DNA of 64,000 nt from Amphiscolops sp. MND2022 (lineage: Eukaryota). Of the stretch, positions 14,614 to 33,870 are shown in pieces (within the stretch, counting starts at the first letter, position 1; each line of letters opens with the position of its first letter). The DNA is taken from positions 66,588,001 through 66,652,000 of the forward strand of contig OZ076411.1 of the NCBI GenBank assembly GCA_964187785.1. The letters run 5' to 3'. Position numbers and translations under genes: made by a program. The notes beneath the pieces are model-generated. The model was given only the letters and a program-made list of their open reading frames with translations, had not been told where the DNA came from and ran no database searches.

Positions 14614-15889
14614 TGAGAAAACCCTCATCAGTTCAGTTCCACAGGACCAAAAAATAATCAATGAGGTTCTTGTATTTCTAACTAATTCTATGAAAGAACA
14701 AGTTTTGTAAAATAGTATCTTTAACTCAAGTGTAGTATAAGGCTTTTTCAACCATAAAACACACCAGTTCTATATCGAATGTTTATGTTTGGAAACACTA
14801 GGTATGTCTGCAATCGAAACTCGTAGAGGTTAAATGTTTTTGATTGACGGATGAACCGTATAACATTCCCCCTTCTCTCTCCGGGGTTCTTCTAGACGCT
14901 GGATGAGGGGCCGGGTTGCATTGTGTTGTCCGGCAGAAAGTCTTGTGGCTTTTGTACACGTCCTGGTAGTGGTTGAGGTGTACTTTTTGTTCGGCTCCAT
15001 GGTTGGCCTGTAACATAAACTTGTTGGCCTGTCATATCCAAAAATTTCCTCTGTAAGGTATACTACCGTACCTATTCGGTTTGTTAGTATCTCGGTTTGA
15101 CCGTCTATTTTTATTTTCAGAATTCTCACCCTGAGGCATTTCTCCATCTGTATGTATTTGTATTACGTCGTTTTCGGGATCTGTCGTATCGGCGCATACC
15201 GTCTATCTCTGTGCGATGTGTCGTATGTTTTCCCGACTTCTTCCGTCATTTCTTCTTCATCATCATCCTCGTCGACTTCGTCTTCCGTCTCAGGCTCGGA
15301 TTGTTTTTTGTTTTGTACTATTTGCAGTTTTCTATTTAGGATGTCCCTCAGGATTTCATCCCATTTCCCGTATTTGCCGTTGAGTCCTCGTAGGCAACGT
15401 CAGTTTTTTGTGTAATTTCGGAAGAAACTGTAGGTGCCGACTCTTTTCGGTGTCTCCTCTCGTTCTGAAATAATGGGCAATAATATTTCAGTGTATACTT
15501 TTCCCCGTATCTGTTTATACGGTGTTCTCAGTTCCGCTTATTGCGGTTTGTATTTTTGATTGAAATCTTCCTTCTAAAGGTTTTCGGTGGTGTCTTTTTT
15601 CTACAAATTTAAATGGATACTTAACCGGGTGCTTTTCTTTGTTGATTTTGAATCCGAAGCCAATTGCCGTTCTTCGGTTTTTGTTCGGGCCATCACAATG
15701 TGATTGGTGATTTCCCCGTTAGCGTCTCGTCCGACATATATCGGTATCTTGGGTCGACTTGGAGCTAAAATAGACTATTCTGACCAATCTGACAGAAAAT
15801 TTTTCATTTTATTAGTTAGTTCCGTTCTCGTTTTTCTACCGTGATGTAATTCAACTGCTGTTTTTAGTCCCGTGTGTATTGTGAATCGC
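14614..15889 (-). mobile_element. Gypsy element, 3' half (integrase C-terminus, PPT 14866-14881, probable 3' LTR 14614-14865), separated from its 5' half by the 16.85-kb insertion
   Basis: The minus strand from 15887 reads RFTIHTGLKTAVELHHGRKTRTELTN, continuing the integrase broken at 32744. PPT gagagagaagggggaa precedes tgttatacgg. The LTR left edge is tentative. Confidence 0.8.
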
Positions 15890-15911
15890 CATTACAGTGC
15901 CAAAAGTGGGT
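15890..15911 (+). repeat. Left TIR
   Basis: cattacagtgccaaaagtgggt, exact reverse complement of 32720-32741. Confidence 0.95.
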
Positions 15912-15949
15912 AATTTGAATTTTTGCAGCGGATTTCTCTGGACGGCAGT

Positions 15950-16240
15950 TTTGGAAAGCGTGCAGCGTAATCCACTAACAAATGCTATTACGTTGCAGTC
16001 GATTCCACTCTTTTGGCGATTTTTCTGCAGCGAATTACGCTGCAAAGCATTAGATTCCACTATCAAATACCTTAAACATTCGGATCTCGCAGTGGATTCC
16101 AATAAACACTGCCGTGGATTCCACTGAACGCTGCAGTGGACTCCACCGATGGCCGCAGTGGACTCCGCCGATTTCCGCAGAGGAATCCACTATCGGCTGC
16201 AGTGGACTCCACTGCAGTGTTTTGGTGGAATTCAGTGAAT
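15950..16240. repeat. Left subterminal array of GTGGA(A/T/C)TCCAC palindromes
   Basis: About 8 copies, for example ccgtggattccactg, gcagtggactccaccg and gcagtggactccactgcag. Confidence 0.9.
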
Positions 16241-17014
16241 TGTTTCACTGAATTATTTCATTGAATTATTTCAATACCAACCTACAAAAACTATCAACCA
16301 TCGAAAAAAAAGTGGAGTTCATGTAGTTCCGTGCCTGAAAGTTCTTCCTTCACGAGTTCAGTTTTGAGAATGAGAAATTTTTTCAGAATCAGCAGGTGTC
16401 ACAAAAAGAAGGATTCAGAATTTCGTCATTCGGCAAACCATTCCCAGTGAGTTTTTACCGCAATCAAGCACCGTTTTAACGCTTTTGTTTAACTGTTATT
16501 TTTTCATACATTGATTGAATCATAGTGGGCATCAAAATTTCACACACAATTCATGCTAGTTACCTAGATATACACACATACCTTTAGGTATAACTAGCTT
16601 TTATTTTTCATTTACCTCATGGTGAATACTAAAGTTTGGTTCCGGAAAACTCACTTTAGGCATACTGCTGACTGCAACGGAGACCTTATCAATTCTACAT
16701 CAAATTTCACACACACCTCTTTCGTGTATTTTAGGTACAACTAGTTTCCACTTTTCAAGTACCTCAGGGCGGAATCCAAAATTTCAAATTGAAATACAAG
16801 CCGAAAGATGAATGGAAATCTAAATTCAGGTGAAGAAGACGTTGCAAGGGAAAATGTTATTCACGGTGTTTTGTTTCGATATTACGAAAAACAAATATTT
16901 GTACTTGTAGCAATCAGTGTTACAAAATGCAAGTGAAATTAAAACGAAAGTAGTGAAAAATCGAATACACAACAACGGAAAGTGTTTTGTAAACGGAGTT
17001 TTCTGACGATTCCA

Positions 17015-17948
17015 TCAGTCAAATATCGGTTGAGAATCTTCCTGGAAAAGTTGATTGGCAATGGGGTCATTGTAATCAAAACGGAGCTGCTCAAATGGTA
17101 GAATATCACGTGTAGCTCGGAACACTACAATCGTTTTGCCATTTTGGAACAATTCGATCACTGTGGGCTTCATGTTGGCGCCGTTTGATTTCAACTGCGA
17201 GTGGTTGGCAAGGCGAACAGGGCAGCGAATATTTGTGTGAAGGGGGCAAACTCTTTGGAGGCATCAATAATTCTTCTAGAGGCGCCTCTTTTAACCTCCA
17301 GAACGAACTCTTGCTCCACACCTTCTTTCTCGAGGACTTGGCTCAATGACATGTTCAAATACACCTCGCCATGGTAATCCATTAAAATGTCGTCCTTTGA
17401 AAATTTCTGTATGGCAATCACACATCTCCCAAATTTTGACATTTTGGCTAAACAGATTCCAGGCCACAGCTGCGTCTCACATCGCTGCGACAACCAAATT
17501 TTTCTTCATATGGCAAATTATGAGCAAATCGAGCATACCGAATTCCACTGCTCCCAGGTACCTGCGAGGATTTCCTATTTGACTGGTTGTTAGAGAGAAT
17601 CAATATCTGCGCTGTCATATTTTTCACGTCCTGGTTCGTATCCTCCAGCGAAGTCCACTTTTGTCGCTGAAAAAATGCCGCCACTCTTGACTCAAAATAG
17701 TTAATAGCAACTTTCGCAGAAACTTGTTCAAAGTAGAGCAAGGACCTGGCTGACTGGCGAGTGTACCTTTGCTGGTCTTGGCGGGCGCAAACAGCGTTTC
17801 TCACATCGTCTTTGTCGAAACCTTCAACATTCGAAAGAACCAAATTCATTGCATGTTTCAGCTTGGCGATTTTGAAGCATGGGTCATTGGAAAGGGGCAT
17901 CAGTTCCGCGACTTTACCTTTCAATATATATTGATCTTTTGCGGTCAT
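17015..17948 (-). CDS. SET-domain lysine methyltransferase (SETD8/PR-Set7-like signature), about 310 aa after two single-base frame corrections
   Basis: KFGRCVIAIQKFSKDDILMDYHG...IIDAS...RLANHS...VVFRATRDILPFEQLRFDYND. The frameshifts sit in short homopolymers (17499-17503 and 17248-17250). No introns seen. Confidence 0.88.
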
Positions 17949-19220
17949 TCAGCGTAAGTTAGTCAAGACGGTCTATGCTTCAACGGTGTAGCTGTGTCTA
18001 CGCGCGTAATGGAAAATAGTGTAAACTAGTCAAAGCACGTAGTTAGTGAAAAGTGGAAGTTAGTCCAAAAATTCTCGTTTTCGTAATTCAGTCAAAACTT
18101 TGACTAACTTCCACTTTTTGCAAATTGCAGATCGCTATACTTGCAATAAGTGGAAGTTAGTCGAAGTTTTGACTAACTTACACCATGTTTATATGCATTC
18201 AACACTCAGTGTTCATTTCAATTCCAATTCATACCACAGCATCGTAAACCAGTCAAAGTAAACAATGATTCGATAAATAATTAGTTATCATTACTAAGCT
18301 CTACCGTGCATAGTAGGTATAAACTGCATTCAATGCAAGTTGCACACGTGAACACGTGTGTTTCATCCACGCATTTACGTGCAAATAAAATACCTTGCAG
18401 CTTCTAATTAGTACAATTATAACAATTGATTGATCTGTCAACGGGTTTCCTATTTCAAGAAAATATATTTTCAAAGCAGCCTTCATTAATAGTTGCCTAA
18501 CTAAATTTAATTTTGGTCCCTGTCGTGAGCACGGTCACCGGAATGATTGGATAACTTGTTATTTTGGTCCGGGTATTTTGAGCCAGGGTATTGACAAGGA
18601 TCTATTTAAATCCCTGTCGTGAGCAACATCAAGAAAAGTTGTAACAAATAATCTATACAAAGTTGACACTTTATCAAACCGAAAACAGTAGTTTATGGAA
18701 TACCGATCTTGAATTATTGAACTAAAAACGAAGTTTGGACCATGTGCCTTATCCTCCCTCAGATAAATACTGTTTCTTATCCAACAACATCCCCCCCGTC
18801 CAAGTCTTCCCAAAGAAATGAAAGTAGGTCTCATAAAGAAGGGGCGATTGTTTCATTGAACTTGGTAATTTTGGTCCCTGTCGTGAGCACTTCCATTAGT
18901 AGTCAGATTGACTGTTTATGCGATTTGATACTGTGTATGCGATTCAAGCAGTGTAGTTATGAGTCGGCGTGTGTAGCTCACCAGTAACAACCCGTAATTA
19001 CCAGAAATATGTGTAAATATGAGATGCACAGTGTAGTTAGTCAAATTGCTTAAACTAGTCAATTGGTGTAAACTAGTCAATTACTGTACTATCCAATGGT
19101 GTAAACTAGTCAACGTTCGAAGCTGTGTCAACTAGTGTAACGTCCTATCAATGCGCACAATGTGTGACAAGTGTAAAACTTCAAAAAAAATATTCGCGCT
19201 CTGATTGGACAAAAATTGAA

Positions 19221-20079
19221 CTAGCAGGATCCTGCTAGTTCGTTACCGGGATGTGTATCGTAATGGTGAACTGTTAGTTCCGATGATCCAATTGTGTGTT
19301 CCACACAGAGATTGAAGGCGTCGCTCAGTGAATCTTCTTCGTGATCCATCACGATTTGCACAACTGAGTGTACCGAGACTTTCCGGATGGAATTTTCAAG
19401 CGTAGCTGGTACCGCATAATTGAACAGGGTTGTAGTTATGCATCAAAAGAGTTCCAACTTAGCTTTTTGTACTAGTCCCACATTTTCTTTCGATGCCTGC
19501 ACATGTTTAGCCAACGTTCTTTTGTACATGTTGTTGTCAAAGTAAGTAACTTTCGCACATATCCTCACTGCACTGGGAGTCAAATGGACGCTTCTCGGGT
19601 GGCTCATTGAGCTGGGGTGACACATTGGTCCCGGGCACATTGCTCTGGGGTGGCAAGTTCTGGTGAGGCAGTGAATTCTGTGACGGGGGGTCCTGTTGTA
19701 GTGGGTTCTCAGGCGGCAAAGGAATATGAGTCAGATTGTGAGCATTCTGCAGTAAATGTTCTAGAGCTTCTGTGGGCGTATGTTCAATCAAGTGCTCGAT
19801 CCCATCGGAGTTCATCATTCTAGTTGCACTGAAGAAACCTTCCTCGGGGGCCGATGGAATTGGCGAATAAGCTGGCGGACAAAACATGGATGCATTACTC
19901 AGGAAATCAGGCGGCACATTCCAGTCGGTAGATAGTCGATGTGACTGTTGCACAGGTGTAGAAGTCTGGGATGGACACAAGCGTGTTGATTCGAGATTTG
20001 AAATTTTGTCAGGCATGCTAGAATTATTCATGAACCTAGGAGCACAAATTTTGACAGCGGATTCCGCTGAATGAATCAA
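19221..20079 (-). pseudogene. Cargo ORF of unknown function (Pro/Gln/Ser-rich N-half)
   Basis: ORFs 19537-20079 and 19443-19640 overlap, and the latter frame continues past a TGA to a TAG at 19221-19223 (CITTTLFNYAVPATLENSIRKVSVHSVVQIVMDH...). No domain recognised. Confidence 0.45.
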
Positions 20080-20477
20080 AATTATGATGTAAAAAGAAAT
20101 GACAATTTTGTAATTAATTTTTTTGATAAAGCGTCGTTTTCCTGATTAGCAGAGACTCGATTTCACCTATTGCACTTCACAGTGACAAAATTAATAATTT
20201 CAACCAGTAAGTGTTATCAAGTTTATTACGGTGGTTGAGTCCTTCCGGGACTCAAATGCCTGTTCAAATATATTAACACTCACGAGATGAGTTTAAAAAC
20301 TAAATGCTAGTAATATTTTCCTTTTATTGATCACTCAAAATGGAATGAAACCTTCTTTTAGGATCATCACCGTAAAATTAGCCTCTTTTTCGCGCAGTTT
20401 TTGTGTTGACACCTGGTAATCACTTTGCACAAACTTGAACAGTTTGTGCTCAAAGGAAGCTCAAGTGTTTCTTTCTG

Positions 20478-21727
20478 TTGAAGTCAACTTTAAACTCCAC
20501 TACAATGCTTCTGCAAACTTTTAAAATATATGAAATAGTCCAAATCCTCGACCCTGAAACCTATATTCGGGAGTCTGCAAAAATAATAGCGTTCATAAGT
20601 GATTGGTCTCTGAAAATCCAATGGATCGACTGGAACAATCGTCTGCAGAAAATTGAAATTCCCCTCGAATTGCGTCTTGACCCAAACAGGTGGAACATTA
20701 GAAAAGCACGACATTCGCAACCAGTCAGGTCGAAAAAGCGTTCTTAACCCCTGTCGTATAACCCAAACCGACTGCAAAAAACGAGCCTGTGACATTCTGG
20801 CTACCCCATGGTGAGTGTGAGGGGCATTGATTTATTGATTCCCATGGAAAATTCAAAACGGGAACTATTTCGACGAATGACCCATCTACCCATGAGTGTG
20901 TCGTGTTTACATTTATCCCCTATTGCTATTTGAAGAACTCTCAGTGGAAGACACCCATGTTCACGATGAGAAAGCAGAAGACGACGAGGAAGCTGAAGAG
21001 ACGAGGCAGCAACATCGGGAAGAACCAAAACAGAAAAGACCTAAAACACAAATACCAGAAATAGACTTTTCAACATTGATACCGCAAACCGATGTTGATG
21101 TCAAATTAAGCTATGTACCTCGTGTCAATGGTATTTGTCGAAAAGGATCCATTATTACTTTGTCTGGAATAGAGTTCAAAGTGGAGGATTTGTACTACAG
21201 TGCACAGAAGTTGAAACAATTTGCAATAATGGTATCCATGGACGACGAAGACTGCGAACTTAGGATGCCAGTAAACAATTGTTCGTTAAAGACCTCGGAC
21301 TATTTAAAAAAACGTGGAAATCAAAATTTTCGCTCTTGATAATGATGTTGATAGAACGTTTGCAGTCTTTTCTGCAAATAAGAGATGTGTTGGTTTGTCG
21401 TTCAAGAAATCATCAACTGTGACAAACATGATACCTGCAACAGAGCTCACAAAACGTGTCTGTGGGTTCAAGTCGGACTCAAGCAGAGAAAACGTGAAAA
21501 TTTCAATAGAAGTTGAAACGGGAAACTTGGGAGGCTACAACAGCTTAGATTTTATATTGGGCCAGAACTGGGACATCATACCAGATACGCTTGAAGATGA
21601 GCCTGCAACATTGATCAAGACATTGAAATTGACGGAACATCGCGACTTTATGATGTTCTCACTCAGGTGCCACATAACTACAACTGAAGGCCACTACAAA
21701 AAATGGAGACTATCGACAAAGCTTTAG
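20478..21727 (+). pseudogene. Cargo ORF with an N-terminal Tudor/chromo-barrel-like domain and an acidic/basic linker, frameshifted
   Basis: FKIYEIVQILDPETYIRESAKIIAFISDWSLKIQWIDW resembles a Royal-family barrel. ORFs 20478-20747, 20896-21339 and 21314-21727 are collinear, and the last two join by removing one A from the A7 run near 21306-21312. Confidence 0.5.
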
Positions 21728-22125
21728 GCAAAACATTCAACATGCTTATTGAATACTTTGTTGACCAATAGGGGTAGCAATTTTGGTATCCACCGTGAGT
21801 AAATGTGCAAATACATCTTCAAAAAACGTCTGTTTTGTTACCCTAAACAAACTGAATGGTATTTTTGTTGGTATTGCACTGATAAAGTTCTTTTTCTTAA
21901 TTCGATTGTTACAGTAATATTGTCCTTGTTACAATAAATGATGTCAAAAAACTTCTTTCATTTGCGACTACTTTCTTGAAAAACTCTCCGCAGAAGATAA
22001 TTTCAAATTATTAATCAGAACTGCTCCCGATATGTAATAATGCTTTGTTACTTTGGTTTTTGCACATGCAAATTTTTGGTACAAACGTTCTACTAAACCT
22101 ACTAAATGCATCTAGCCAGAAACAG

Positions 22126-22400
22126 TAAGTGGATTTCACTAACGTATACCACTACATTGACAGTGGATTCCACAAACAATTTCTTAAACGTTTGCAAACC
22201 AATCCAAAAGGGGTACATTCAGTTAATTATTAGTTCTAAATAGACTCAAGTTTCTATTGTAGTGGATTCCACTATTCTGGAAAAAATTCTTCATCCTGCA
22301 AAAAGCGATATGCGGAATCGACAGACGTATTTCAATACACTAAAAGTGAGTTCCACAAACAAATGCTCGAACATTTGCAAACCAATATAAAAGAGTAAAT
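22126..22400. repeat. Internal repeat with GTGGATTCCAC motifs; inverted, rearranged partner at about 26400-26660
   Basis: The reverse complement of about 22150-22260 matches about 26408-26530, and that of about 22255-22320 matches about 26530-26600. Confidence 0.85.
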
Positions 22401-22792
22401 TCTAATCTAAATTCTGTTCAATTCTAAACTAAAGAGTTTGATAAAAAACAATAAACTATAAAAGTTTGCTCAGGCAGCTTGTTTGTTCACCATAGTGAAT
22501 TTTTCTCGAGGCTTTTTTTTGCAATGTAGGCTCGTTGCGAAGGCCAGATGGTAGAGAGCAATTTTCTTGCTCAAAAATATTTCGAAAGTGTCGCGGCTTG
22601 CAATGAGAGGCGGCAGGGTGTCTAAACAGATCATAATGATGGGATTTGTGATTTTTTTTCAACAGAGTCAATTTCAAGGTTTTCCGATAGACTAGTGGTC
22701 AAATATCTATGTAAAGTTTAACATCAAGACTTTGAAAACTATGACATCCACAATTGCGGCTCCTAACCTATATCGAAGACGTCCTTCTCTTT

Positions 22793-25351
22793 TTAAAGGA
22801 TGCTACGGTCACGTGTGCTGGTATTCTGCATTGCTTCGGGGATTTCGGCCTGGTGCAATGGTCCAATTCGCACTTCTTTGACAGTCCCTGTGAAGGCGTA
22901 GACTGACCATTTTGGGTCGCGATAGGGCTTCTCCGGACCCCTGAATCCCAGTTGAGTTAAGTTGAAAGCTGGATACACCTGGTAACAAAAGGCACTGACA
23001 ATGATGAATAGAGCGAATTCAATGAGAAATGTGCAAAATTACAATTACGTTTGAAGAAAATACGTTTAAATTGTTAGGCAGTTAGAAACGAGAACCATTA
23101 AAATCCGTAGTTCACAACCCAGTCCGTGGAAGAGATTAGTTTTTTTTCTACATTATCAGTTACCATTCATAATCAACAAACATTGATTACCATTTTGATG
23201 GCGTCGAGCTCACTGCTGATCTGCTCTTTCAGAAGAGTCAGTTGTGGGCTGGAGAAGAGGGGGCTCCATGATCCTCTCAGGGAATTGAGTTTCCGCTGGA
23301 GTTGTCGTATTTTAAACTGTAGCACAGCATAAACACGAACAACTCCGGGAAAAACCTCTTCGTCGTCTATTTCCTGCTGACTGGCGTTGAGGTGACTGTC
23401 CACAATTAGAGGGAATTGTGTGACAGCGAGGAAGTTGGAGGCAAAAGCAATGGCGTCTCCCTTTGTTGCCACTATATGTGGCCAGCGTGCAGGCACAACG
23501 AGGATGAAGACTAAATAAAAACAAAATAGTATACATTTAAACGAAACAACTGGTTCAATGACTTTGAATCATGTGCATGATTGATAATGTGCTCTTCGCA
23601 AAATGATGATCTGAGTACAAGTATGTACATGATCAGAGTACATTTACCTTTTTGTGGGGATATTGCTCCACTCCTCAAAGAGCTGCAAGTTTGATCTTGT
23701 CGGCTCCACCAGCCAGAAGATATTCTGCCCTCGAGCGACAGTATAAAAGGCAGTCGTGCTTGGAAAATCGACTTGCCACGGTGTGAGACACTGATCATTT
23801 GAGACCAGCAAATATTTTGAAGTAGCCTCAGTCAAGTGCACTGCTACATCCACACACTCATCTGCAAGTTGGTCAACCGCACAGTAACGGACAAAGTCTG
23901 GTACTTGGAAAAACTAAACGAAAACGACAAGACATCAGCAACCGGTTTCAGAACAAAGACTCCCTACAGTGGTCGCCATTTTCAACATCCAATTAGTTGC
24001 TAAAAATTTGAACAAAAGAAGGGTGCATCATGTATTTCACTGACTTTTGGCACTGTAAAGACACCAAATTCAAACAGATATTTTTTCCAATGAGAGCCCT
24101 TCCAAGATATGATAAAAAAAACTTACATTCTGTTCGAGTGCAATGTCAACGACATTGACAGGAATTGTCCCCGTGGGTGCTGCTGAGGGCCCCGCTCGCT
24201 GCTCGTCCAGGTACTCGCTCACTGTTAAAGACCTGACCTAAAATTCGAAAAAAAATATTTCAAGCATACTCCTTTGAAATTACTTTACCAATGTTTAGAT
24301 AAGTTACAGTGAAATCCACTGCCAACGATGACTTAGTGGATACTAAATCTCAATATGTTTTGATTCAACGTATACAATAATTTTTATCACTATTGGTAAA
24401 ACGCTAAACTTGAATGAATTTTGTGAAGTTCGAAAAATACAAAGATTGGCGGGATATGTTCACCTGTTGGTCATGTGGCAGCCGTGATGACTTTGCAGCA
24501 AGCTTTGCTGCAGGATTAGCCAAGTGCTGCAGCAAGAACTCCACTTGGTGGACGAAGTCCTCAGCGGGCAAAACTGGGAGCTTCAAACCTCGCGAGTTCA
24601 AAGCCCCGTTCTTCCACAATATCGGCTGGCCACGAGAGAGTGCTTTCAGGACCATGCCGTTTTCGTCTTCTTGCTGATTTTCCCACCTGCAGCAGTTCTA
24701 GGGCTCCTCTGAAAGCGGCATGTCCTCTAAGTTCTTTACGAAAAGACTTGATCCTTCGTACGCCCGTCGACTAGGCTCGCTCGACATTGCCATGTCGCTT
24801 TCTTTGTGGAGGGGAAATCGTTCCAGGTGTCTCTGTAGGGAGTCACTCCGGACAAATTTCTCACCACAGTATGTGCAAGGATATTTTTTGCTGGGGTTGT
24901 CAGTTTCTAGAAAAATTTATTGAATAGAATTTAAACTAATAACCTTGTTCGCACATTTTGACTATACTTATGTTCGTATTATGTTCGTATTATGTTCGTA
25001 TTTATTTGTATCTAAATCCTAAACTGTCACACTAAGAATAAATATATGTTTGAGGCTTTCTGGTTTGTATTCACGTCTTTGTGATAAAAGTTTTACACAG
25101 TTTTTTCAAGAAAAAAGTGGTAGGGGGAACGAAAAGAGCCGCAAATCGTTGACATAGTTGATCTACTTACTATACTTTCTTTCATTTTGGGGTATGTCTG
25201 TTGTGCAGTACCTCGCTTTCTCGATGTTCCGCTTGAGCGTTACAAGGGTGGCGAAGACCCTCTTGCAACGGGGACAGGCTTTGTTTTGCGGCTGCTTTGT
25301 ACCGCGGCGGCGGTTCGACTTGTACGAACAGTTGGGGCAGCTGTATTCAGT
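22793..25351 (-). pseudogene. Spliced C2H2 zinc finger plus JmjC (KDM7/PHF8-KDM2-like) gene with an ELM2-like C-terminal motif; one in-frame TAG
   Basis: GT-AG exons 25351-25171, 24906-24464, 24237-24127, 23913-23648, (uncertain mini-exon about 23610-23550), 23510-23191 and 22978-22793. Motifs: YPCTYCGEKFVRSDSLQRHLERFPLH; QPILWKNGALNSRGLKLP; SKYLLVSNDQCLTPWQVDFPSTTAFYTVARGQNIFWLVEPTRSNLQLFEEWS; VVPARWPHIVATKGDAIAFASNFL; VRIGPLHQAEIPE. The stop is at 24698-24700 and the start exon was not found. Confidence 0.85.
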
Positions 25352-25621
25352 CTGTAGAAGCAAAACAACATTATAGTTTATCCTCGAAGCGTCTTACATG
25401 TAAACGCCAAATATTCGAACCGCTAAGAGATATTACAACCTCCCATTTCAAATAAAGACCTGTTTTTCCAATCAGTAAAAGGAGGAAACGAACAAGCAAA
25501 AAAACAGAACATGCCAAAATTGCTAAACCACAAATGAATTTAGAACTCCACCATTTTAAAATGGAGATAAATATCTCGGTTGTTTAACAATATGAATAAA
25601 TAAAAACAAACAAATAACAAA

Positions 25622-25700
25622 GCGCTATGGCCGAGTGGTAAGCAACTAAACTATGAAGCCATAGATCGTGGACTCGAATCTCTATCGTGTCGATCCTATG
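25622..25700 (+). repeat. tRNA-derived (SINE-like) head
   Basis: gcgctatggccgagtggtaag (A-box) and gactcgaatctc (B-box-like), without a complete acceptor stem. Confidence 0.55.
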
Positions 25701-26790
25701 TTATCTCAGAAAAACTGAGTTTACCTAATTTTTCAATTAATATGTAAAAACTTTGATCTTGCTATCGCGAAATTTAGTTTGATTGTCTATGTTAACAAAA
25801 ACTTTTAATCTTTTCTTCATATCGTATCATTGCTTTCTGATTTCATCTGCCAACAGTTGAGTATCAAAAAGAAATGGTCTTTGACATGAGTATTGCATTG
25901 CTTTCCCTTAAAACGAGATAGATCGAAATCGGGTCTTTTCTGTTATTCCCTCCACTCTATTCTTTAAAAATTACCCCCAATATTTCTTTTGTCAGGATAA
26001 GAATCGAGGTATTTGACTCACTCCCTAATGATTCACTTCTCAATGATGAACACCTACCAACATTTCAAAAATTAGGACAAGAATTGTTGTATAGGACTGA
26101 CTTCATATTGATTCGCTTCTTAGTGAATTGAGTGGGATGGGAGTAAATTTGCTGGGAGGGGGGGGCTTTTAAAAGAAAAGACCCACGAAATCGATAACAA
26201 TTTTTTACTCAACGATTTCTCTGCAAATAGTGATCAGTTTTTCACTCAGGCCTGTTCAAAGAAGATGGCAGTTCAAACTCAGATTTGTTTTTACTACTCG
26301 GGAAAACCAAAAATTTCGTATGAAAATTCAAGAGCAGTTTTGCTGACAGTGTGTACATTTTCTTGCTAACTCAGGTTTTTCCACTACTCACAATAGATAC
26401 AAAAAATACAAATAGAAACTTGAGTCTATTTAGAACTAATAATTCACTGAATGTACCCCTTTTGAATTGGTTTGCAAATGTTTAAGCATTTGTTTGTGGA
26501 ATCCACTGTCAATGTATAGGTATATGTTAGTCAATTCCGCATATCGCTTTTCGCAGGAAGAAAAACACTTTCCAGAATAGTGGAATCCACTGCAATAAAG
26601 TCTATTTAGAACTAATGCTTTACTGATTGTACCCCTTTTAAATTGGTTTAAAATGTTTAAGATTTCTTGTCTAAGTTTCCGAGAAAAAAATGTTCAAAAG
26701 GTAAATTAGTACCACAAGCAAAGATTAAAACATATGTCTTCGAAATCATTTATTGTAACAAGCATTTGCAGAAATCAGAGTAGAAATCGA

Positions 26791-29700
26791 TCATCTGCTG
26801 GAGTTTTGTTGCTTGACTAGGCCGTTTCGGTATCTTTTCAAGGCCACAATGGCTGACGTGTTCGCTATTGATTTGTTATCATCTATTTGATCCATCAAGA
26901 GTCGTCGCATGTCAATAATTTTCATCGGGTTGATCAAGAGTCCAGGCCTTATAATATAATTTTCAGGGTCCAGTATGACGTTACTTTTCATCATTTCGAG
27001 TACGTATTCAACAGTGATGAACATGAGACCCGCCGAGGCAAATCTTTTGCAGGCCAAAGCTGCAGGAGACAACTTCTTTTTTGTTGAACACTTTTCATCT
27101 TCTCTGCTTTCGGCGTCTGTTGACAACTCGCTTGCGGTACAATGTCTATGGAGCTTCAGTTTTCTTCTCATGGCTTCCAATTGATGTTTATCGCCATTCG
27201 CGTTTATTAGGTCCTCTTCGTTTTTGACAATAACGTAAAAATTCAAGATATTTGAATGGGATTTCATTATGTTCTCCGCGTTTTCTTTCTCATAAACGAC
27301 ACCTCCCATTTCGGAAATTCTATCTTTGAGGAAATCCTGTGTGAGCCCACGCTTGAAGCTACCTACAATTGTAAATCTCAATCCTCGTAGAAGGTCGCAA
27401 AATTCTCTCTTTTCGCCAACGGCAAGGCAGGGTAGCGCCAAGGGAGTTCTGCAAATGTCTAGATAGGTTTTGGCACCCTCTAAAGTCTTTTCAGTCGTGA
27501 GTGTTTTTCTAACATGTTCAATTACATTGTATTTTTTTCGAAACTTGTTGAAGAAAAATCCAGGAACCGGCAAAACGAAAATGCAGTATCAAGAAATAAT
27601 GGATCTTGATGGTAAGTGGAGCCACCGCCTCTTATGGTTCGGGATTGAAAATTTCTGTTCGCATTGTGGTTCGATTTTTCCAAGCCTTCCCAGAGGTGAT
27701 TCCATGGCTTCTCGATGTGTCCGCTCTCCACTATTTGGGCTATCAATGGAAGCTTGAGCTTGTATGGTGACAGCCCCTTTCGCCCGAAGAGGAGCAAATT
27801 GATTTGAAAGTATGTTTCAGCCCATCGTTTGTAAGTGTCGACATCAAATGTTCCCTGAGTTCTCAACAGAATAGCACACTGGTTTAAACTTTGTCGTAGA
27901 AGCTCACAAGCGTCATAAATTGATATATATCTTTCTTCGTTTCATATCATTCTCAGTGCAACGCGTTATCATGTGTGTAGCGTCTGGCAGATTGTTCTGA
28001 CATCGATTATGCTTGCTAATGCTTCTCTAGGAACATGTTGTCCGAATGGGATCTTCGAAGATGTTCGTCTTCCATCAACATCTGAGCAGCGGGTGGGGAG
28101 GAAATTTTCATCGCATACATATATCGGAAGTTGTGACGCTTGGGAACTTGAACGTTCAGTTGAAGTTCCCAGGACCAAACGCGTCAAGAACGGGCTGTCA
28201 CCACTGTATGTAATTTCAACGCCCAACGCTTGTAGTTCTTTTGTCTGGCGGTATAGCCATCCAGATTCTTGCTTACCCAGGATAGACGGGCCAAAGTTTT
28301 GTTCCATTGCATATCGGCGATTTTTGTGCCACGATATGATGCAAAACAGAAGACAGCTTTCGATGATTGGCTGCTAACTGTGGTGTTCAAAATTCTGAAT
28401 GCTAGACACGTTACCTCAACCCCCCTATTTCGCAACCGTCACCCCAAACATCAATTGTAAGGCCTACAAGATTGGTTTTTTGCAGTAAAACTAATGACGC
28501 AAACGTCACTGCTTTCAGTAAACTGACTCGAAATCCAGAATAGGTTCGCTCAGGCTCGCAAATTGTAACAAACAATTTCATTATGAGGCGAGTAGCTCTT
28601 TTGATGTGACGAATTGACGGTACTAGGCTGCCACCTCCTAAACCAACCGGAACTAGCCTTTGTCGAATTGCATTGAGGATATATTCCATGTTGCTAGTTT
28701 TCATTTTGATTGAAAGTTCGTACCTAAAGCACTCGGGGGAGCCCCTGTCCTCCAAAAGACCCGTGAACAAGTCTCGAATGTGATTACCGCTTGCGCTTCT
28801 TTTTCGCCACGTGCTACGTTTCTGATGCTGTTCTTTGAGAATTGTGGCTATGGGTAATCCGTGAATAGGTAAACCATGCACTCTAGCAAAATTCAGGACT
28901 TTGGTCCAAAAAGTTTTCTTATTAGTTCTGTGCCACCTTTTGGGTTGTAATTGCGTAATATTCATATCTGATCGTTGCTGGTCTTTGGAATTATTAACTT
29001 CTGATGTCATCTGTAGCACTGCCTTTTCTTGGAATGTTACTTCAAGGGGTGTTTCTCCAACCATCTCATGTTGAGAAGAAAATTTATCATTTGTAAAAGT
29101 ACCGACATCGGGGCAAAATCTGGTGTTGGAATATTTTGAAACGAATTTTCTTCTTTTCTCGTTTCAAGGTAGTTCTTTATAGCCCCGCAGAAATAAAAGT
29201 TTCAATCCAGGAACCGGCAAAACGAAAATGCAGTATCAAGAAATAATGGATCTTGATGGTAAGTGGAGTCACCGCCTCTTATGGTTCGGGATTGAAAATT
29301 TCTGTTCGCATTGTGGTTCGATTTTTCCAAGCCTTCCCAGAGGTGATTCCATGGCTTCTCGATGTGTCCGCTCTCCACTAGTTGGGCTATCAATGGAAGC
29401 TTGAGCTTGTATGGTGACAGCCCCTTTCGCCCGAAGAGGAGCAAATTGATTTGAAAGTATGTTTCAGCCCATCGTTTGTAAGTGTCGACATCAAATGTTC
29501 CCTGAGTTCTCAACAGAATAGCACACTGGTTTAAACTTTGTCGTAGAAGCTCACAAGCGTCATAAATTGATATATATCTTTCTTCGTTTCATATCATTCT
29601 CAGTGCAACGCGTTATCATGTGTGTAGCGTCTGGCAGATTGTTCTGACATCGAATATGCTTGCTAATGCTTCTCTAGGAACATGTTGTCCGAATGGGATC

Positions 29701-31520
29701 TTCGAAGATGTTCGTCTTCCATCGACATCTGAGCAGCGGGTGGGGAGGAAATTTTCATCGCATACATATATCGGAAGTTGTGACGCTTGGGAACTTGAAC
29801 GTTCAGTTGAAGTTCCCAGGACCAAACGCGTCAAGAACGGGCTGTCACCGCTGTATGTAATTTCAACGCCCAACGCTTGTAGTTCTTTTGTCTGGCGGTA
29901 TAGCCATCCAGATTCTTGCTTACCCAGGATAGACGGGCCAAAGTTTTGTTCCGTTGCATATCGGCGATTTTTGTGCCACGATATGATGCAAAACAGAAGA
30001 CAGCTTTCGATGATTGGCTGCTAACTGTGGTGTTCAAAATTCTGAATGCTAGACACGTTACCTCAACCCCCCTATTTCGCAACCGTCACCCCAAACATCA
30101 ATTGTAAGGCCTACAAGATTGGTTTTTTGCAGTAAAACTAATGACGCAAACGTCACTGCTTTCAGTAAACTGACTCGAAATCCAGAATAGGTTCGCTCAG
30201 GCTCGCAAATTGTAACAAACAATTTCATTATGAGGCGAGTAGCTCTTTTGATGTGACGAATTGACGGTACTAGGCTGCCACCTCCTAAACCAACCGGAAC
30301 TAGCCTTTGTCGAATTGCATTGAGGATATCTTCCATGTTGCTAGTTTTCATTTTGATTGAAAGTTCGTACCTAAAGCACTCGGGGGAGCCCCTGTCCTCC
30401 AAAAGACCCGTGAACAAGTCTCGAATGTGATTACCGCTTGCGCTTCTTTTTCGCCACGTGCTACGTTTCTGATGCTGTTCTTTGAGAATTGTGGCTATGG
30501 GTAATCCGTGAATAGGTAAACCATGCACTCTAGCAAAATTCAGGACTTTGGTCCAAAAAGTTTTCTTATTAGTTCTGTGCCACCTTTTGGGTTGTAATTG
30601 CGTAATATTCATATCTGATCGTTGCTGGTCTTTGGAATTATTAACTTCTGATGTCATCTGTAGCACTGCCTCTTCTTGGAATGTTACTTCAAGGGGTGTT
30701 TCTCCAACCATCTCATGTTGAGAAGAAAATTTATCATTTGTAAAAGTACCGACATCGGGGAAAAATCTGGTGTTGGAATATTTTGAAACGAATTTTCTTC
30801 TTTTCTCGTTTCAAGGTAGTCCTTTATAGCCCCGCAGAAATAAAAGTTTCATTATTTTCGATGCAACAAAAACAGATCCCTGGGGCTGCCCTTTAATTGG
30901 TAGGTTTTGAATAAGATCGTCTATCTTCAGAGTCGTCCCTACGACCATTTCAGCAACGATTGAAGTAAGTTTCCGTTGACGATTTTGTAACGTGTTTCCT
31001 GATATAAAGTCTAGTATTTTGGAATCTATGAATTCTTTCCCATCATCCAGTGATAGATTGAACTTTTCGAATTCTGACATTTCTGAACTTTTAGACAAAG
31101 AAATTGAGCGTGTCAATGGTGTATCAAATCGTCGATAATGATGAAGCCGAAAAATTATCAAAATCCATTTCTTTGTGTTTCAGTTTCCCTCCTTTTGCGT
31201 CTTCTGATACGCCGTGTTTTTGCCTCAACTTCAAATAAATTTATTCTTGCAACATTTTTTTCACGGTATTACCGTACGCTGTTTAAATATTTCTTCAACA
31301 CCTGTTTGAAACTATTTCATTGCACGCGTTGAACTAAAACTACAAGGTCATACGTGCGATCACTAGTAGGTGATAAAATTAGGTGCAATTGTTCCCAAAA
31401 AATCATGTGGAAGGATTTTTCAGTGATGTTTTTTCTCCACCGTGAGTTGGTTGACATTGTATAGAAGATTTGCCAGCGAATGATTCTGTTGTTTTTCGAA
31501 CGTGAGTTGACCGTGAACAC
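26791..31520 (-). CDS. Divergent RAG1/Transib/Chapaev-like DDE transposase with C-terminal BRCT domain (about 1000 aa reconstructed with the duplication removed; several frameshifts)
   Basis: Ordered motifs LTIDVWGDG (D at 28438-40), TYSGDSPFL (D at 28197-99), PDATHMITRCTE, GLSPYKLKL and WEGLEKSNHNANRNF (E about 27678-80). BRCT about 26950-27400: LRGLRFTIVGSF...LKDRISEMGGVV...ITVEYVLEMMKSNVILDPENY. The N-terminal start is approximate. Confidence 0.75.
27558..30851. repeat. Near-identical tandem duplication, 2 x 1647 bp (27558-29204 and 29205-30851), covering the transposase catalytic core
   Basis: All ORFs recur at +1647 (27866 to 29513; 28411 to 30058; 29064 to 30711) with only scattered substitutions. 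Confidence 0.95.
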
Positions 31521-32289
31521 ATTTCAAGCACTACAACTTCTTGACCAAAAATGGTGAAAAAATTTTTTTTCAATTGAAGAAACTACACTTTATCATGACA
31601 AAAAGAAAGACGTAAACAAAACTTTTAACAAAATTTTTATAATAAGGAGAGAATTTTAGAATAATAGAGAAGAGAGGAACGCATCAGGTGTGAGTTGTAA
31701 CCATTGAAGTTGTAAACATTGCAACCATAAAGAGTGATTTTGAAGTTCCCACCATTCGCCGATTGCTTCACAGAATTTGTATGATTTTGACCTGAAACAA
31801 ACAAAAAAGAAAAAAATCTGGAACTTTTTCCTTTTCCCTACACTTTTCAAGATGTTGTTTTTGCAATTACAGTAGACTTCGGATAATGGAATATCGGCTA
31901 AATATCGAAATCAAAACTTCGGGTAAACGAAAAAAAATCCTCGGCAGTATAGATCATAGTAGCATGTTTTCGTTTTATCGAATATTTCACTGAATCGAAA
32001 ATTTTTCGCCGTTCCTGCATAATTTGAGCCGAACCTAAGTAAGTGCTGTATTGCGAGATAACTTCATCAACACAGGTATATTTGTAATCCTCCGTGATAG
32101 AGTGTTTTATCGAAAACATCAAAAGCTGTTAGAAGTAGCAAAGACTGAATTTATTTATCTAATAATAATAAATTAATAATAATAATAATTTTATATAATT
32201 TTCTATAACAGGTGTGGACGGTCAAAACAAAAGGGCCAAATGTTTTGTTTCAGCATGAAAAATTGCAAGAAGATTATTTCAAAGTTATT

Positions 32290-32700
32290 AATTATGTTTC
32301 ATTGATCTGTCCTTTCGAAGAAACTTGGAGTGGATTCCACTTCAGCTTACAGTGAATTGAACTTTGGCTCACAGTCAATTCCACTCGTTTTGCAGTCAAT
32401 TCCACAAGTTGAAAAGTGGAATCGACTGTAGGCCAAAGTGGAATCGACTGTAAGCCAAAGTGGAATCCACTGTAATCTGAAGTGGAATCCACTGCAAGTT
32501 TCAGCAAATTTCGCTGAAAGTTGAAATAAGCTGACGCGCTTGGTTCAGTCAGTTGGCAGTGAAAAGCAGTGGATTTCGGTGCACACATTTTTGTACATTA
32601 GCTAGATATGTTAGTGGAATCCAAAACAGGCTACCGCGGAACCCAATGAAAATCAGTGAAATACATGTTTAAATGTATGTCAGTGGATTTCGGTGACTTA
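32290..32700. repeat. Right subterminal array of GTGGAATCCAC-type palindromes
   Basis: About 10 copies (gagtggattccactt, gtggaatcgact twice, gtggaatccact twice, and others). Confidence 0.9.
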
Positions 32701-32719
32701 ATAGCAGAAAAGTGTGTTA

Positions 32720-32741
32720 ACCCACTTTTGGCACTGTAATG
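32720..32741 (-). repeat. Right TIR
   Basis: acccacttttggcactgtaatg. Confidence 0.95.
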
Positions 32742-33870
32742 GCATTACTTTTAGTGCTGGGTTTACGCTTTCGGTTGAGTTATTACCGTCTTCCATATTA
32801 GCTAAGACTAAGTTTTTCATTGTTTGTACTGCTCTTTCAACTGATCCTTTTCCGGTATGCATTCGGGGGGTGGGCAATACAGGATTTCTATATTTTGGGC
32901 ATTTACAATATTCTTTGTATTCAGTCGAAATGAATGCCCCCTTTATAAGATTCAATTTTTTCTGGAATACCGTATTATTTAAACTGATTTGATAAGAAAC
33001 TTATGACTTTTCCGGTAAAATCTATTTGTAATTCTTGTCCGGGTTCGGATAGTTTCCCTAATATTCCGTATTGCTTTTTGGAATTTGATATTTAAGGTTC
33101 TTACCTGTGGCTGAGCAGGCCGTGCAGTCCTATACTTTCTGTTCAATGTCCTTCCGCATTTCCGACCACCAGAAGATCTTTGCCTCGGATAGCATTTTGG
33201 TTGTCCCAGAGTGAGCGAAATGTAGAATTTCATTTAATTTTTTTCGTCGATGGGGACGCCACTATGATCGTCTACAAAGACTGAACCCCACCGAATTGAA
33301 AGCTTGTCGAAGACCGCTCTATATCCTTCCGGAGCGGTATCTCTTTCTTCTCTCCTCATGCTGGCTCTTACTTGTGTCATTTCCGGATCAATAGCCGTTT
33401 TTGAGGTAAGAATTTTCAAGTCTAGCATGAAGTTGAATTCCGCTTTCTTTATGTTCTCCTCCGTTATCTTTTTGTTTTCGATGAGGTTTCCCACTATGTG
33501 GATTATTTGGATATAGTGAGCTTCCTTGCCTTCTGTGTGATATTTGCTGAGATCGACGATCGGCAGATTATCGCCCCGCATTATCACGCTGTCTTCTTCG
33601 GTGTCTACCGTATTTTGTTCAGTGTGTGATTCTCCTTCTTCCGGTGTTTCCGGTTCTTCCTCTTCTTCGTCTTGTATTGGGCTGTATCCCCCGCCTATCC
33701 GGTTTGCTCTTTGTGTGAGCTCGGCGTCTATTTCCGCAATTTCTTCCAGGTTTCTTTTGTTTGGTCATGACGGGGCAAAAATTGACCTTTGTGATTGCGA
33801 ATCGTATCGTCTCCGCATTGTTCCGGGTCTTGCTAGAGCTTCTCTCGTTGTCTGATATCTTTTCGAAACA
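32742..33870 (-). mobile_element. pol: Gypsy pol fragment (RNase H-integrase linker, HHCC, integrase core), the 5' half of the interrupted element
   Basis: TAIDPEMTQVRASM...FDKLSIRWGSVFVDD; LHFAHSGTTKMLSEAKIFWW...DCTAC; GAFISTEY; GKGSVERAVQTMKNL...SVNPALKVM ending at the TIR. Confidence 0.88.

What the first reader, a model, noticed from the sequence alone, without database searches (positions are those of the whole stretch)
22793..25351. Transposon-borne C2H2-JmjC gene with altered catalytic ligands: possible pseudo-demethylase
Seen: the KDM7/KDM2 motif YTDFHIDF appears as LTPWQVDF (first Fe-binding His replaced by Gln). The 2-oxoglutarate Lys position (EKIF) reads QNIF, while Asp and the distal His (WPH) remain. 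C2H2-type fingers replace the PHD or CXXC domain of host enzymes, and an ELM2-like motif ends the protein. Most splice phases are still consistent. Inference: a DNA-targeted, catalytically dead methyl-lysine binder or decoy; simple decay is also possible given the TAG at 24698.
Basis: partly seen in the sequence, partly recalled or inferred. Interest (0 to 1): 0.75.

Follow-up and report, generated by a model that had tools for sequence, protein, structure and literature searches.

The report
Dead copy of transposon demethylase gene
The "altered catalytic residues" are private mutations of one broken, decaying copy of a gene carried by a 17-kb jumping element; about 44 sister copies keep the normal iron- and cofactor-binding residues, so this is not a pseudo-enzyme.

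Summary

- The gene lies in a 16.85-kb element (window 15890-32742) with terminal inverted repeats and at least 45 copies in this 1.07-Gb genome.
- The first Fe-binding His codon is CAT in 44 of 45 copies. Only the window has CAA (Gln).
- The 2-oxoglutarate Lys codon is AAG in 42 of 45 copies. Asn arose three times independently, once in the window.
- The TAG is TGG in all 27 sister copies aligned, and the terminal TAA is a sense codon in all 27 (CAA where shown, CGA in L025).

The window copy also has private 1-bp, 27-bp and 65-bp deletions, a 1-bp insertion and 39 private coding substitutions. It is a pseudogene.

The family gene has 7 exons and encodes 592 aa: three zinc fingers, a KDM7/PHF8/KDM2-like JmjC domain and an ELM2-like motif. 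Eight of 27 copies keep an open frame, and four of these also keep every splice site. Between the two subfamilies pN/pS is 0.20 (p = 2e-10).

The element therefore probably carries a working JmjC oxygenase, but this copy does not. The scan has already reported this family from other windows of the same genome.

The parts
15890..32742 (.). The whole mobile element that carries the gene. It ends in 22-nt terminal inverted repeats, CATTACAGTGCCAAAAGTGGGT. This copy also has a 1.3-kb insertion or replacement at 17942-19265 and an internal ~1.65-kb tandem duplication in the transposase region (27944-29590 repeated at 29591 to about 31240).
   Evidence: Seven other copies stop matching at exactly 15889/15890 or 32741/32742. 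The TIRs were read directly.
25171..25371 (-). Exon 1: the conserved ATG (25371-25369) plus zinc fingers 1 and 2. Private lesions: a 1-bp deletion in the T-run 25365-25362 (a frameshift after codon 2), a 27-bp deletion between 25308 and 25307 that removes the His and last Cys of finger 1, Cys>Arg at 25306, and finger-2 His>Asn at 25228.
   Evidence: In the intact copy L012 this exon scores zf-C2H2 at E=8.8e-9.
24464..24906 (-). Exon 2: zinc finger 3 (YPCTYCGEKF...HLERFPLH) and the N-terminal strands of the JmjC catalytic domain. It holds a private nonsense TGG>TAG at 24700-24698.
   Evidence: zf-C2H2 at E=3.3e-6. The codon is TGG in 27 of 27 sister copies.
24127..24237 (-). Exon 3 (37 codons), in phase 0 at both ends.
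23648..23913 (-). Exon 4: the first half of the JmjC core. It holds the Gln codon CAA at 23775-23773 (family: CAT, His), the Asp codon at 23769-23767, and the Asn codon AAT at 23724-23722 (family: AAG, Lys).
   Evidence: The L012 equivalent matches PHF8 at E=7.5e-11 and KDM2A at 1.3e-10.
23191..23510 (-). Exon 5: the second half of the JmjC core, with the distal His codon at 23478-23476, followed by a helical region. A private 65-bp frameshifting deletion lies between 23508 and 23507 and removes about 22 codons (family: ...PTSFGNLKALTGGVHKLVVEAGD...).
   Evidence: The L012 equivalent matches C. elegans KDM7 at E=7.9e-6.
22768..22978 (-). Exon 6 with the ELM2-like motif VRIGPLHQAEIPE (22873-22835). 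A private nonsense CAA>TAA lies at 22795-22793. In the family the frame runs on to a GT donor after 22768.
   Evidence: ELM2 at E=5.6e-4 in the window and 7.5e-5 in L012. Read-through in sister copies is shown.
22470..22621 (-). Exon 7 (family: 43 codons, stop conserved as TGA or TAA, equivalent to 22489-22487 in the window, followed by AATAAA in the young subfamily). The window copy has one extra A in the run within 22523-22510, which shifts the frame.
22109..22393 (.). Array of a ~183-bp repeat just downstream of the gene. The same unit lies in inverted orientation at 26411-26668 upstream of it.
   Evidence: In the genome it was found only at places that are copies of this element.
26411..26668 (.). 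The upstream, inverted partner array of the ~183-bp repeat. Younger copies hold 3-5 units.

Best explanation
Window 25371-22470 (minus strand) is a dead, neutrally decaying copy of a seven-exon gene. That gene is standard cargo of a ~17-kb cut-and-paste DNA transposon (window 15890-32742).

The family gene encodes a 592-aa protein: three C2HC/C2H2 zinc fingers, a JmjC domain of the KDM7/PHF8/KDM2 (JHDM1) type with the full Thr/His/Asp/Tyr/Lys/His iron and 2-oxoglutarate set, and an ELM2-like N-terminal motif.

The His>Gln and Lys>Asn changes that drew attention are two of 39 substitutions found only in this copy. This copy also lost its reading frame several times over. No protein of the proposed kind can be made from it, and no lineage of the element carries those changes.

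Shown: the changes are private, the copy is broken, and the family gene is under purifying selection.

Inferred: the family protein is an active Fe(II)/2-oxoglutarate oxygenase, most likely a histone lysine demethylase. The element may use it on its own chromatin, guided by the zinc fingers, to resist silencing.
For: 1. Copy number and element limits. There are 81 matching pieces at about 90% identity, and the element ends and TIRs are shared.

2. Key codons in 27 aligned sister copies.
- The first His is CAT in 27 of 27.
- The Lys is AAG in 27 of 27.
- The distal His is present in all 28 copies, the window included.
- The Asp is present in 24 of 27.
- The window's TAG is TGG in 27 of 27.

3. 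Genome-wide pattern census.
- The His codon is CAT in 44 of 45 copies. CAA occurs only at C3:66611765-66611790, which is the window.
- The Lys codon is AAG in 42 of 45 copies.
- The other two Asn copies, C5:73048819 (AAT) and C4:40263324 (AAC), differ from the window at flanking diagnostic sites, so they arose independently.

4. Window-private lesions.
- 1-bp, 27-bp and 65-bp deletions.
- TGG>TAG and CAA>TAA.
- One extra A in exon 7.
- 39 private coding substitutions, 26 non-synonymous and 13 synonymous, pN/pS 0.58.

5. The family gene is maintained.
- Both subfamily consensus sequences are open.
- Eight of 27 copies have an open 1779-nt frame (L003 1761 nt).
- L005, L012, L013 and L014 also keep every GT/AG.
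- Between-subfamily pN/pS is 0.20, Fisher p=2e-10.
- Shared variants give pN/pS 0.34 and private variants 0.80.

6. Domain identity. PDB phmmer finds PHF8 at 7.5e-11, KDM2A at 1.3e-10, KDM7A at 1.3e-8 and ceKDM7 at 7.9e-6. Pfam finds zf-C2H2, JmjC/Cupin_8 and ELM2.

7. A 61%-identical relative from a marine metagenome (P0009) keeps HVD, Lys and WPH in one uninterrupted ORF.
Against: - No RNA data exist for this organism in the run index, so the 7-exon model and its expression are inferred from conservation and splice signals only.
- The window-specific lesions could not be checked in independent reads. The Logan contigs do not cover 23648-23855 or 24584-24791 at 98% likeness or better.
- Hitting two of about 4-6 catalytic codons with 26 non-synonymous changes is somewhat unlikely by chance (my estimate p is about 0.02-0.04). 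However, the window was picked because of those hits.
- Enzymatic activity of the family protein is untested.
- Pfam JmjC scores stay just under the gathering cut-off because the domain is split over two exons that could only be searched apart.
Confidence: 0.93

Rival explanations
1. One reading: a catalytically dead JmjC protein (His>Gln, Lys>Asn) kept by the transposon as a DNA-targeted methyl-lysine binder or decoy, in the manner of pseudo-enzymes.
For: The two substitutions are real and hit exactly the metal and co-substrate ligands while Asp and the distal His remain. Most splice sites are intact.
Against: Neither change is shared by any other copy (0 of 44 for Gln; the two other Asn copies are independent and keep His). 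The same copy has two nonsense codons, three frameshifts and a destroyed zinc finger. Its private substitutions show no clear constraint.
Confidence: 0.02
2. The lesions of this copy are assembly or polishing errors in a repeat-rich region, and the real locus holds an ordinary intact copy.
For: The element is a 45-copy repeat, a setting where collapsed or chimeric consensus can arise. Reads could not confirm the key sites.
Against: There are 39 private substitutions spread evenly over 2.9 kb, with a comparable divergence in the introns. There are four indels of very different sizes. The same element copy also has a 1.3-kb insertion and a 1.65-kb duplication elsewhere. This is the pattern of an old insertion, not of polishing noise. 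The copy groups with four other old-subfamily copies (L002, L003, L006, L008) that are equally diverged.
Confidence: 0.03
3. Family level: the conserved JmjC protein is not a histone demethylase. It could be a protein hydroxylase, or a scaffold that works mainly through its zinc fingers and its ELM2-like motif (for example by binding a deacetylase).
For: Several JmjC proteins are hydroxylases, and JMJD6 appears among the weak hits. KDM2 proteins have demethylase-independent roles (title and abstract of bioRxiv 10.1101/561571, seen). The ELM2 motif is conserved.
Against: The best matches are all JHDM1-type lysine demethylases (PHF8, KDM2A, KDM7A, PHF2, ceKDM7). Every ligand needed for catalysis is conserved in 42-44 of 45 copies and in a 61%-identical relative.
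Confidence: 0.25

Closest known systems
KDM7A / PHF8 / PHF2 and KDM2A/B (JHDM1-type JmjC histone lysine demethylases)
   Same: These are the best sequence matches over both halves of the JmjC core. In intact family copies the Thr-x-x-His-x-Asp, Tyr, Lys and distal His sit at the aligned positions (LTPWHVDF...FYTVARGQKTFW...ARWPHIV). The N-terminal strands that precede the core are also present in exon 2.
   Different: There is no PHD finger, CXXC domain, F-box or LRR. Instead there are three N-terminal C2HC/C2H2 fingers and a C-terminal ELM2-like motif. The gene sits inside a multi-copy DNA transposon rather than at a single host locus. The window copy itself lacks the His and Lys and is broken.
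Catalytically altered JmjC proteins kept by selection (S. pombe Epe1, JARID2, PHF2 with Tyr for the distal His). Named from my own knowledge; the Epe1 paper PMC6576747 appeared.
   Different: In those proteins the altered residue is fixed in the lineage and the reading frame is conserved. Here the altered residues are private to one copy with a destroyed frame.
Transposon-encoded chromatin or anti-silencing factors: VANC of Arabidopsis VANDAL21, and TET/JBP dioxygenases carried by fungal KDZ transposons. Named from my own knowledge, not checked here.
   Same: A mobile element carries an accessory gene that could change the epigenetic state of the element. In the KDZ case the enzyme is also an Fe(II)/2-oxoglutarate dioxygenase.
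   Different: The enzyme class and substrate differ (JmjC acting on protein lysine, against TET/JBP acting on DNA bases). The host is an animal. The transposase looks RAG1/Transib-like only by a language-model lead. No paper in the searched library joins Transib and JmjC.
ELM2 domain of MTA1, MIER and CoREST (deacetylase-recruiting)
   Same: The N-terminal signature (V/I)R(I/V)GxxxQAxIP is present and passes Pfam's cut-off in the intact copy (24.0 bits against 21.7).
   Different: Only profile positions 1-23 of 53 match. Exon 7, which would hold the rest, gives no ELM2 hit. No SANT domain follows.

Membership tests
JmjC Fe(II)/2-oxoglutarate oxygenase, KDM2/KDM7 (JHDM1) type - the window copy | HxD/E...H facial triad that binds iron | tested here: not met
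   The window reads Q-V-D...H (CAA at 23775-23773).
JmjC Fe(II)/2-oxoglutarate oxygenase, KDM2/KDM7 (JHDM1) type - the window copy | 2-oxoglutarate-binding Lys | tested here: not met
   The window has AAT (Asn) at 23724-23722.
JmjC Fe(II)/2-oxoglutarate oxygenase, KDM2/KDM7 (JHDM1) type - the window copy | An uninterrupted reading frame across the domain | tested here: not met
   TAG at 24700-24698, a 65-bp deletion at 23508/23507, TAA at 22795-22793 and a 1-bp deletion after the ATG.
JmjC Fe(II)/2-oxoglutarate oxygenase, KDM2/KDM7 (JHDM1) type - the element family | HxD...H triad plus the Thr, Tyr and Lys that hold 2-oxoglutarate | tested here: met
   His in 44 of 45 copies, Lys in 42 of 45, distal His in 28 of 28, Asp in 24 of 27. 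Thr and Tyr are visible in LTPWHVDF / AFYTV of the intact copies.
JmjC Fe(II)/2-oxoglutarate oxygenase, KDM2/KDM7 (JHDM1) type - the element family | Significant sequence similarity to solved JHDM1-type catalytic domains | tested here: met
   PHF8 at 7.5e-11, KDM2A at 1.3e-10, KDM7A at 1.3e-8 and ceKDM7 at 7.9e-6. Pfam JmjC scores 21.8 and 15.1 bits on the two separate exons, each under the 24-bit cut-off because the domain is split.
JmjC Fe(II)/2-oxoglutarate oxygenase, KDM2/KDM7 (JHDM1) type - the element family | Demethylase activity on methyl-lysine | not testable with these tools
   This needs a biochemical assay.
Selected pseudo-demethylase (catalytically dead JmjC kept for binding) | Altered ligands fixed in a lineage, with the open frame kept under purifying selection | tested here: not met
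   Gln is found in 1 of 45 copies. Asn is found in 3 of 45 copies, independently. The window frame is destroyed, and its private substitutions give pN/pS 0.58 with two nonsense changes.
C2H2/C2HC zinc finger | Cys-x2-Cys...His-x(3-7)-His/Cys ligand spacing recognised by the Pfam profile | tested here: met
   Family copy L012: 35.8 bits against a cut-off of 25.2, in two stretches in exon 1, plus a third finger in exon 2. Window: the exon 2 finger scores 27.7 bits, finger 1 is lost to the 27-bp deletion, and finger 2 has His>Asn.
ELM2 domain | A full ~53-residue domain matching the Pfam profile | tested here: inconclusive
   Only profile positions 1-23 match (24.0 bits in L012, 21.2 in the window). 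Exon 7 has no hit.
Cut-and-paste DNA transposon | Terminal inverted repeats and many copies that end at the same bases | tested here: met
   A 22-nt TIR, with seven further copies ending at 15889/90 or 32741/2.
Cut-and-paste DNA transposon | Target-site duplication | tested here: inconclusive
   The flanks of the window copy (..GAATCGC / GCATTAC..) show no clear duplication.
Transib / RAG1-like superfamily | A transposase with a RAG1-type RNase H core | tested here: inconclusive
   The 347-aa and 418-aa ORFs of copy L033 give no Pfam hit and no PDB hit. Only the language-model neighbour search points at RAG1 families, with scores of 0.89-0.94.

The most novel reading that the evidence does not exclude
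The window copy is dead, but the family it comes from may be new. It would be a recently active animal DNA transposon that carries its own zinc-finger-guided KDM7-like histone demethylase with a deacetylase-recruiting-type motif. A SET methyltransferase and a Tudor-like gene sit beside it. The element would use this kit to rewrite the chromatin marks on its own copies, for example at the 183-bp inverted arrays that bracket the gene, and so escape heterochromatic silencing. The same genome holds many further loci with a 54-57% identical JmjC exon, so TE-borne JmjC genes may be a wider phenomenon here.
Probability: 0.35. Interest if true: 0.75.

Novelty: new variant of a known kind. Interest (0 to 1): 0.3.

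Why it matters
For this window, the result removes a false lead. There is no transposon-kept pseudo-demethylase here, only a pseudogene whose mutations happened to strike two catalytic codons.

For the family, the result is more useful. It gives a genome-wide census showing that the catalytic residues, the reading frame and the splice sites are kept under selection in a young subfamily (0.4-2% from its consensus). It also gives the full 7-exon, 592-aa gene model.

If the protein is an active demethylase, this would be an animal example of a mobile element that carries its own chromatin eraser. That makes the idea of self-encoded anti-silencing directly testable.

The scan had already flagged the same family in other windows of this genome, so this report adds a check rather than a discovery.

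Tried and rejected
- RNA evidence. The run index holds only four runs of unrecorded type from one sample and none on record as RNA, so splicing and expression could not be tested.
- Reads. Laying the Logan contigs of those runs at 98% likeness or better left the decisive bins (23648-23855, 24584-24791) uncovered. The contigs are 55-206-nt unitigs of the repeat, so they neither confirm nor contradict the lesions.
- Structure. An AlphaFold2 model of the 223-aa relative P0009 with an 11-row alignment gave mean pLDDT 40 and pTM 0.25. It was too poor for a fold search, so none was run.
- Full-length protein searches. The spliced protein has no reference and was not typed in, so exons were searched apart. 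The word search with exon 5 returned only ORF fragments from ENA assemblies. The large HMMER search was not used because the family was not in doubt.
- Transposase class. Pfam and PDB phmmer gave nothing on the two long ORFs of copy L033.
- The tRNA-like stretch at 25620-25700. ARAGORN and Rfam found nothing.
I did not try to obtain those letters another way, so no target-site duplication could be read from a young copy.
- Considered and rejected: that the Asn at the Lys position is inherited within a sub-lineage. The other AAT copy (C5:73048819) carries the ancestral bases at the window's private sites. It also shares a different marker (TGTG) with a Lys-bearing copy on C13.
Full report
**What is in the window**

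The stretch 22793-25351 lies on the minus strand of a eukaryotic, intron-bearing genome (1.07 Gb, 1929 contigs; the window is C3:66588001-66652000).
- E1: 25351-25171
- E2: 24906-24464
- E3: 24237-24127
- E4: 23913-23648
- E5: 23510-23191
- E6: 22978-22793

- LTPWQVDF at 23787-23764.
- GQNIF at 23730-23716.
- RWPH at 23487-23476.
- The in-frame TAG at 24700-24698.

Pfam recognises a C2H2 finger in E2 (E=3.3e-6) and the first 21 positions of ELM2 in E6 (E=5.6e-4). It gives only a faint JmjC hit in this copy.

**The decisive test: other copies**

A DNA search of the same genome found 81 matching pieces from about 45 places, at 86-95% identity. BLAST against 29 fetched loci showed two things at once. 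All of them hold about 65 extra bases at window 23507/23508, and about 27 extra bases at 25307/25308. A MAFFT alignment of the window with 27 sister copies placed both as deletions private to the window.

Key codons in the sister copies:

| Site | Sister copies | Window |
|---|---|---|
| First His | CAT in 27 of 27 | CAA (Gln) |
| Lys | AAG in 27 of 27 | AAT (Asn) |
| TAG position | TGG in 27 of 27 | TAG |
| Distal His | present in all 27 | present |
| Asp | present in 24 of 27 | present |

To get beyond the fetched loci I ran two pattern censuses over the whole genome.
- The His codon is CAT in 44 of 45 hits. CAA occurs only in the window copy.
- The Lys codon is AAG in 42 of 45 hits. Asn occurs in the window, in C5:73048819 (AAT) and in C4:40263324 (AAC).
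- The C5 copy keeps the ancestral bases at the window's private sites. It also shares a different marker with a Lys-bearing copy on C13. The three Asn changes are therefore independent.

That condition is met.

**How broken the window copy is**

Its private lesions are:
- A 1-bp deletion in the T-run just after a conserved ATG at 25371-25369.
- A 27-bp deletion that removes the His and last Cys of the first zinc finger.
- Cys>Arg and His>Asn at zinc ligands of fingers 1 and 2.
- TGG>TAG in E2.
- A 65-bp frameshifting deletion at the start of E5, which explains the one out-of-phase junction.
- CAA>TAA at 22795-22793.
- One extra A in exon 7.

In all it has 39 private coding substitutions, 26 non-synonymous and 13 synonymous (pN/pS 0.58). 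Its divergence in introns is about the same as in exons.

The element copy around it is also rearranged. It has a 1.3-kb insertion or replacement at 17942-19265 and a ~1.65-kb tandem duplication in the transposase region.

With 26 non-synonymous hits over about 510 remaining codons, striking two of the 4-6 catalytic codons has a chance of roughly 0.02-0.04. This is my own Poisson estimate. It carries little weight, because the window was selected for exactly that feature.

**The family gene**

In sister copies the ATG is in frame with E1 in 25 of 27. E6 reads through the position of the window's TAA for eight more codons to a GT donor. A seventh exon follows (window equivalent 22621-22487). 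Its stop is conserved in both subfamilies, as TGA or TAA, and in the young subfamily it is followed by AATAAA.

The full model is 1779 nt, or 592 aa.
- Eight of 27 copies have an open frame over all seven exons (L003 with in-frame deletions, 1761 nt).
- Four of these (L005, L012, L013, L014) also keep every GT/AG.

The copies fall into two groups:
- A young subfamily, 0.4-2% from its consensus.
- An older one at 5-6%: the window, L002, L003, L006 and L008.

Selection on the gene:
- Between the two subfamily consensus sequences there are 36 synonymous and 25 non-synonymous differences. This gives pN/pS 0.20, Fisher p=2e-10.
- Variants shared by two or more copies give pN/pS 0.34.
- Singleton variants give pN/pS 0.80.

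This is the expected picture for a gene under purifying selection while the element is active, and decaying neutrally after each insertion.

**What the protein is**

The exons of the intact copy L012 were searched separately, because a spliced protein has no reference.
- E1 holds two fingers (zf-C2H2, E=8.8e-9) and E2 a third.
- E4 matches PHF8 (7.5e-11), KDM2A (1.3e-10), PHF2 and KDM7A (about 1e-8) across TPWHVDF...GQKTFW.
- E5 matches C. elegans KDM7 (7.9e-6), KDM7A, PHF8 and KDM2A across ...ILVLPARWPHIV....
- E6 passes the ELM2 cut-off but only for profile positions 1-23. E7 has no hit.

A word search with E5 returned ORF fragments from ENA assemblies. One of them is P0009, from a marine metagenome contig. 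It is 61% identical, has no intron at the E4/E5 position, and keeps HVD, Lys and WPH. The catalytic set is thus conserved well beyond this genome's copies.

**Is it transposon-borne?**

Yes.
- Eight 10-kb stretches around other copies stop matching the window at 15889/15890 on one side and 32741/32742 on the other.
- The ends carry the same 22-nt inverted repeat.
- The element also carries a SET-domain ORF (Pfam 4.1e-10).

The transposase class is less certain. The two long ORFs of a young copy give nothing in Pfam or the PDB. Only a language-model neighbour search points at RAG1 families. I could not read a target-site duplication.

**Most likely mechanism**

For the window copy there is none: it is a relic.

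For the family, my best estimate is about 0.65-0.7 that it is an active Fe(II)/2-oxoglutarate oxygenase. Given that, it is most likely a lysine demethylase of the KDM7/KDM2 kind, brought to DNA by its fingers. The idea that it serves the element as an anti-silencing tool is inference only (about 0.35).

**Prior work**

Searches of the paper library found no description of a JmjC gene in a Transib-like or other animal DNA transposon.

Earlier notes of this scan describe the same family from other windows. They report a 17-kb cut-and-paste element with zinc-finger/JmjC, SET and Tudor-like genes, and dead copies with intact sisters. My independent results agree with them.

**Verdict**

The pseudo-demethylase interpretation is refuted, and simple decay is confirmed. 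The underlying family is an interesting but already-noted variant of a known enzyme kind.

Noticed in passing
window 22109-22393 and 26411-26668: Arrays of a ~183-bp repeat lie in inverted orientation on either side of the JmjC gene (88% complementary arms). Younger copies hold 3-5 units per side. In the genome the unit turns up only at copies of this element. It could be a binding-site array for the element's zinc fingers or transposase, or the trace of how the gene cassette was acquired.
   Followed up: partly
G000, for example C11:29991759-29991947, C4:77896156-77896332, C1:40166042-40166218: Besides the ~45 copies of this family, more than 60 further loci encode a 93-98-aa open frame that is 51-57% identical to the first half of the JmjC core (1668 first-look candidates). 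This suggests one or more other multi-copy families with a related JmjC exon, possibly the BEL/Pao antisense JmjC genes noted elsewhere in this scan.
   Followed up: no
window 27944-31240 and 17942-19265: The element copy in the window has an internal tandem duplication of about 1.65 kb in the transposase region. It also has 1.3 kb at 17942-19265 where other copies have about 215 bp, next to the SET-domain ORF.
   Followed up: partly
window 25617-25700 (+): A stretch resembling the 5' half and T-arm of a tRNA (GCGCTATGGCCGAGTGGTAAGC...GGACTCGAATCTC) sits between the JmjC gene and the upstream repeat array and is part of the element. ARAGORN and Rfam do not call it.
   Followed up: yes
L040 (ENA ERZ908403, marine metagenome contig, 1548 bp) 529-1200: An intron-less 223-aa ORF (P0009) is 61% identical to exons 4-5 of the family and has all catalytic residues. 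Related elements or genes therefore exist in marine plankton samples.
   Followed up: partly
L019 / L023 (G000:C529:13848-22148): Two copies of the JmjC region lie about 3.3 kb apart on one small contig. This indicates a tandem or rearranged arrangement of the element there.
   Followed up: no
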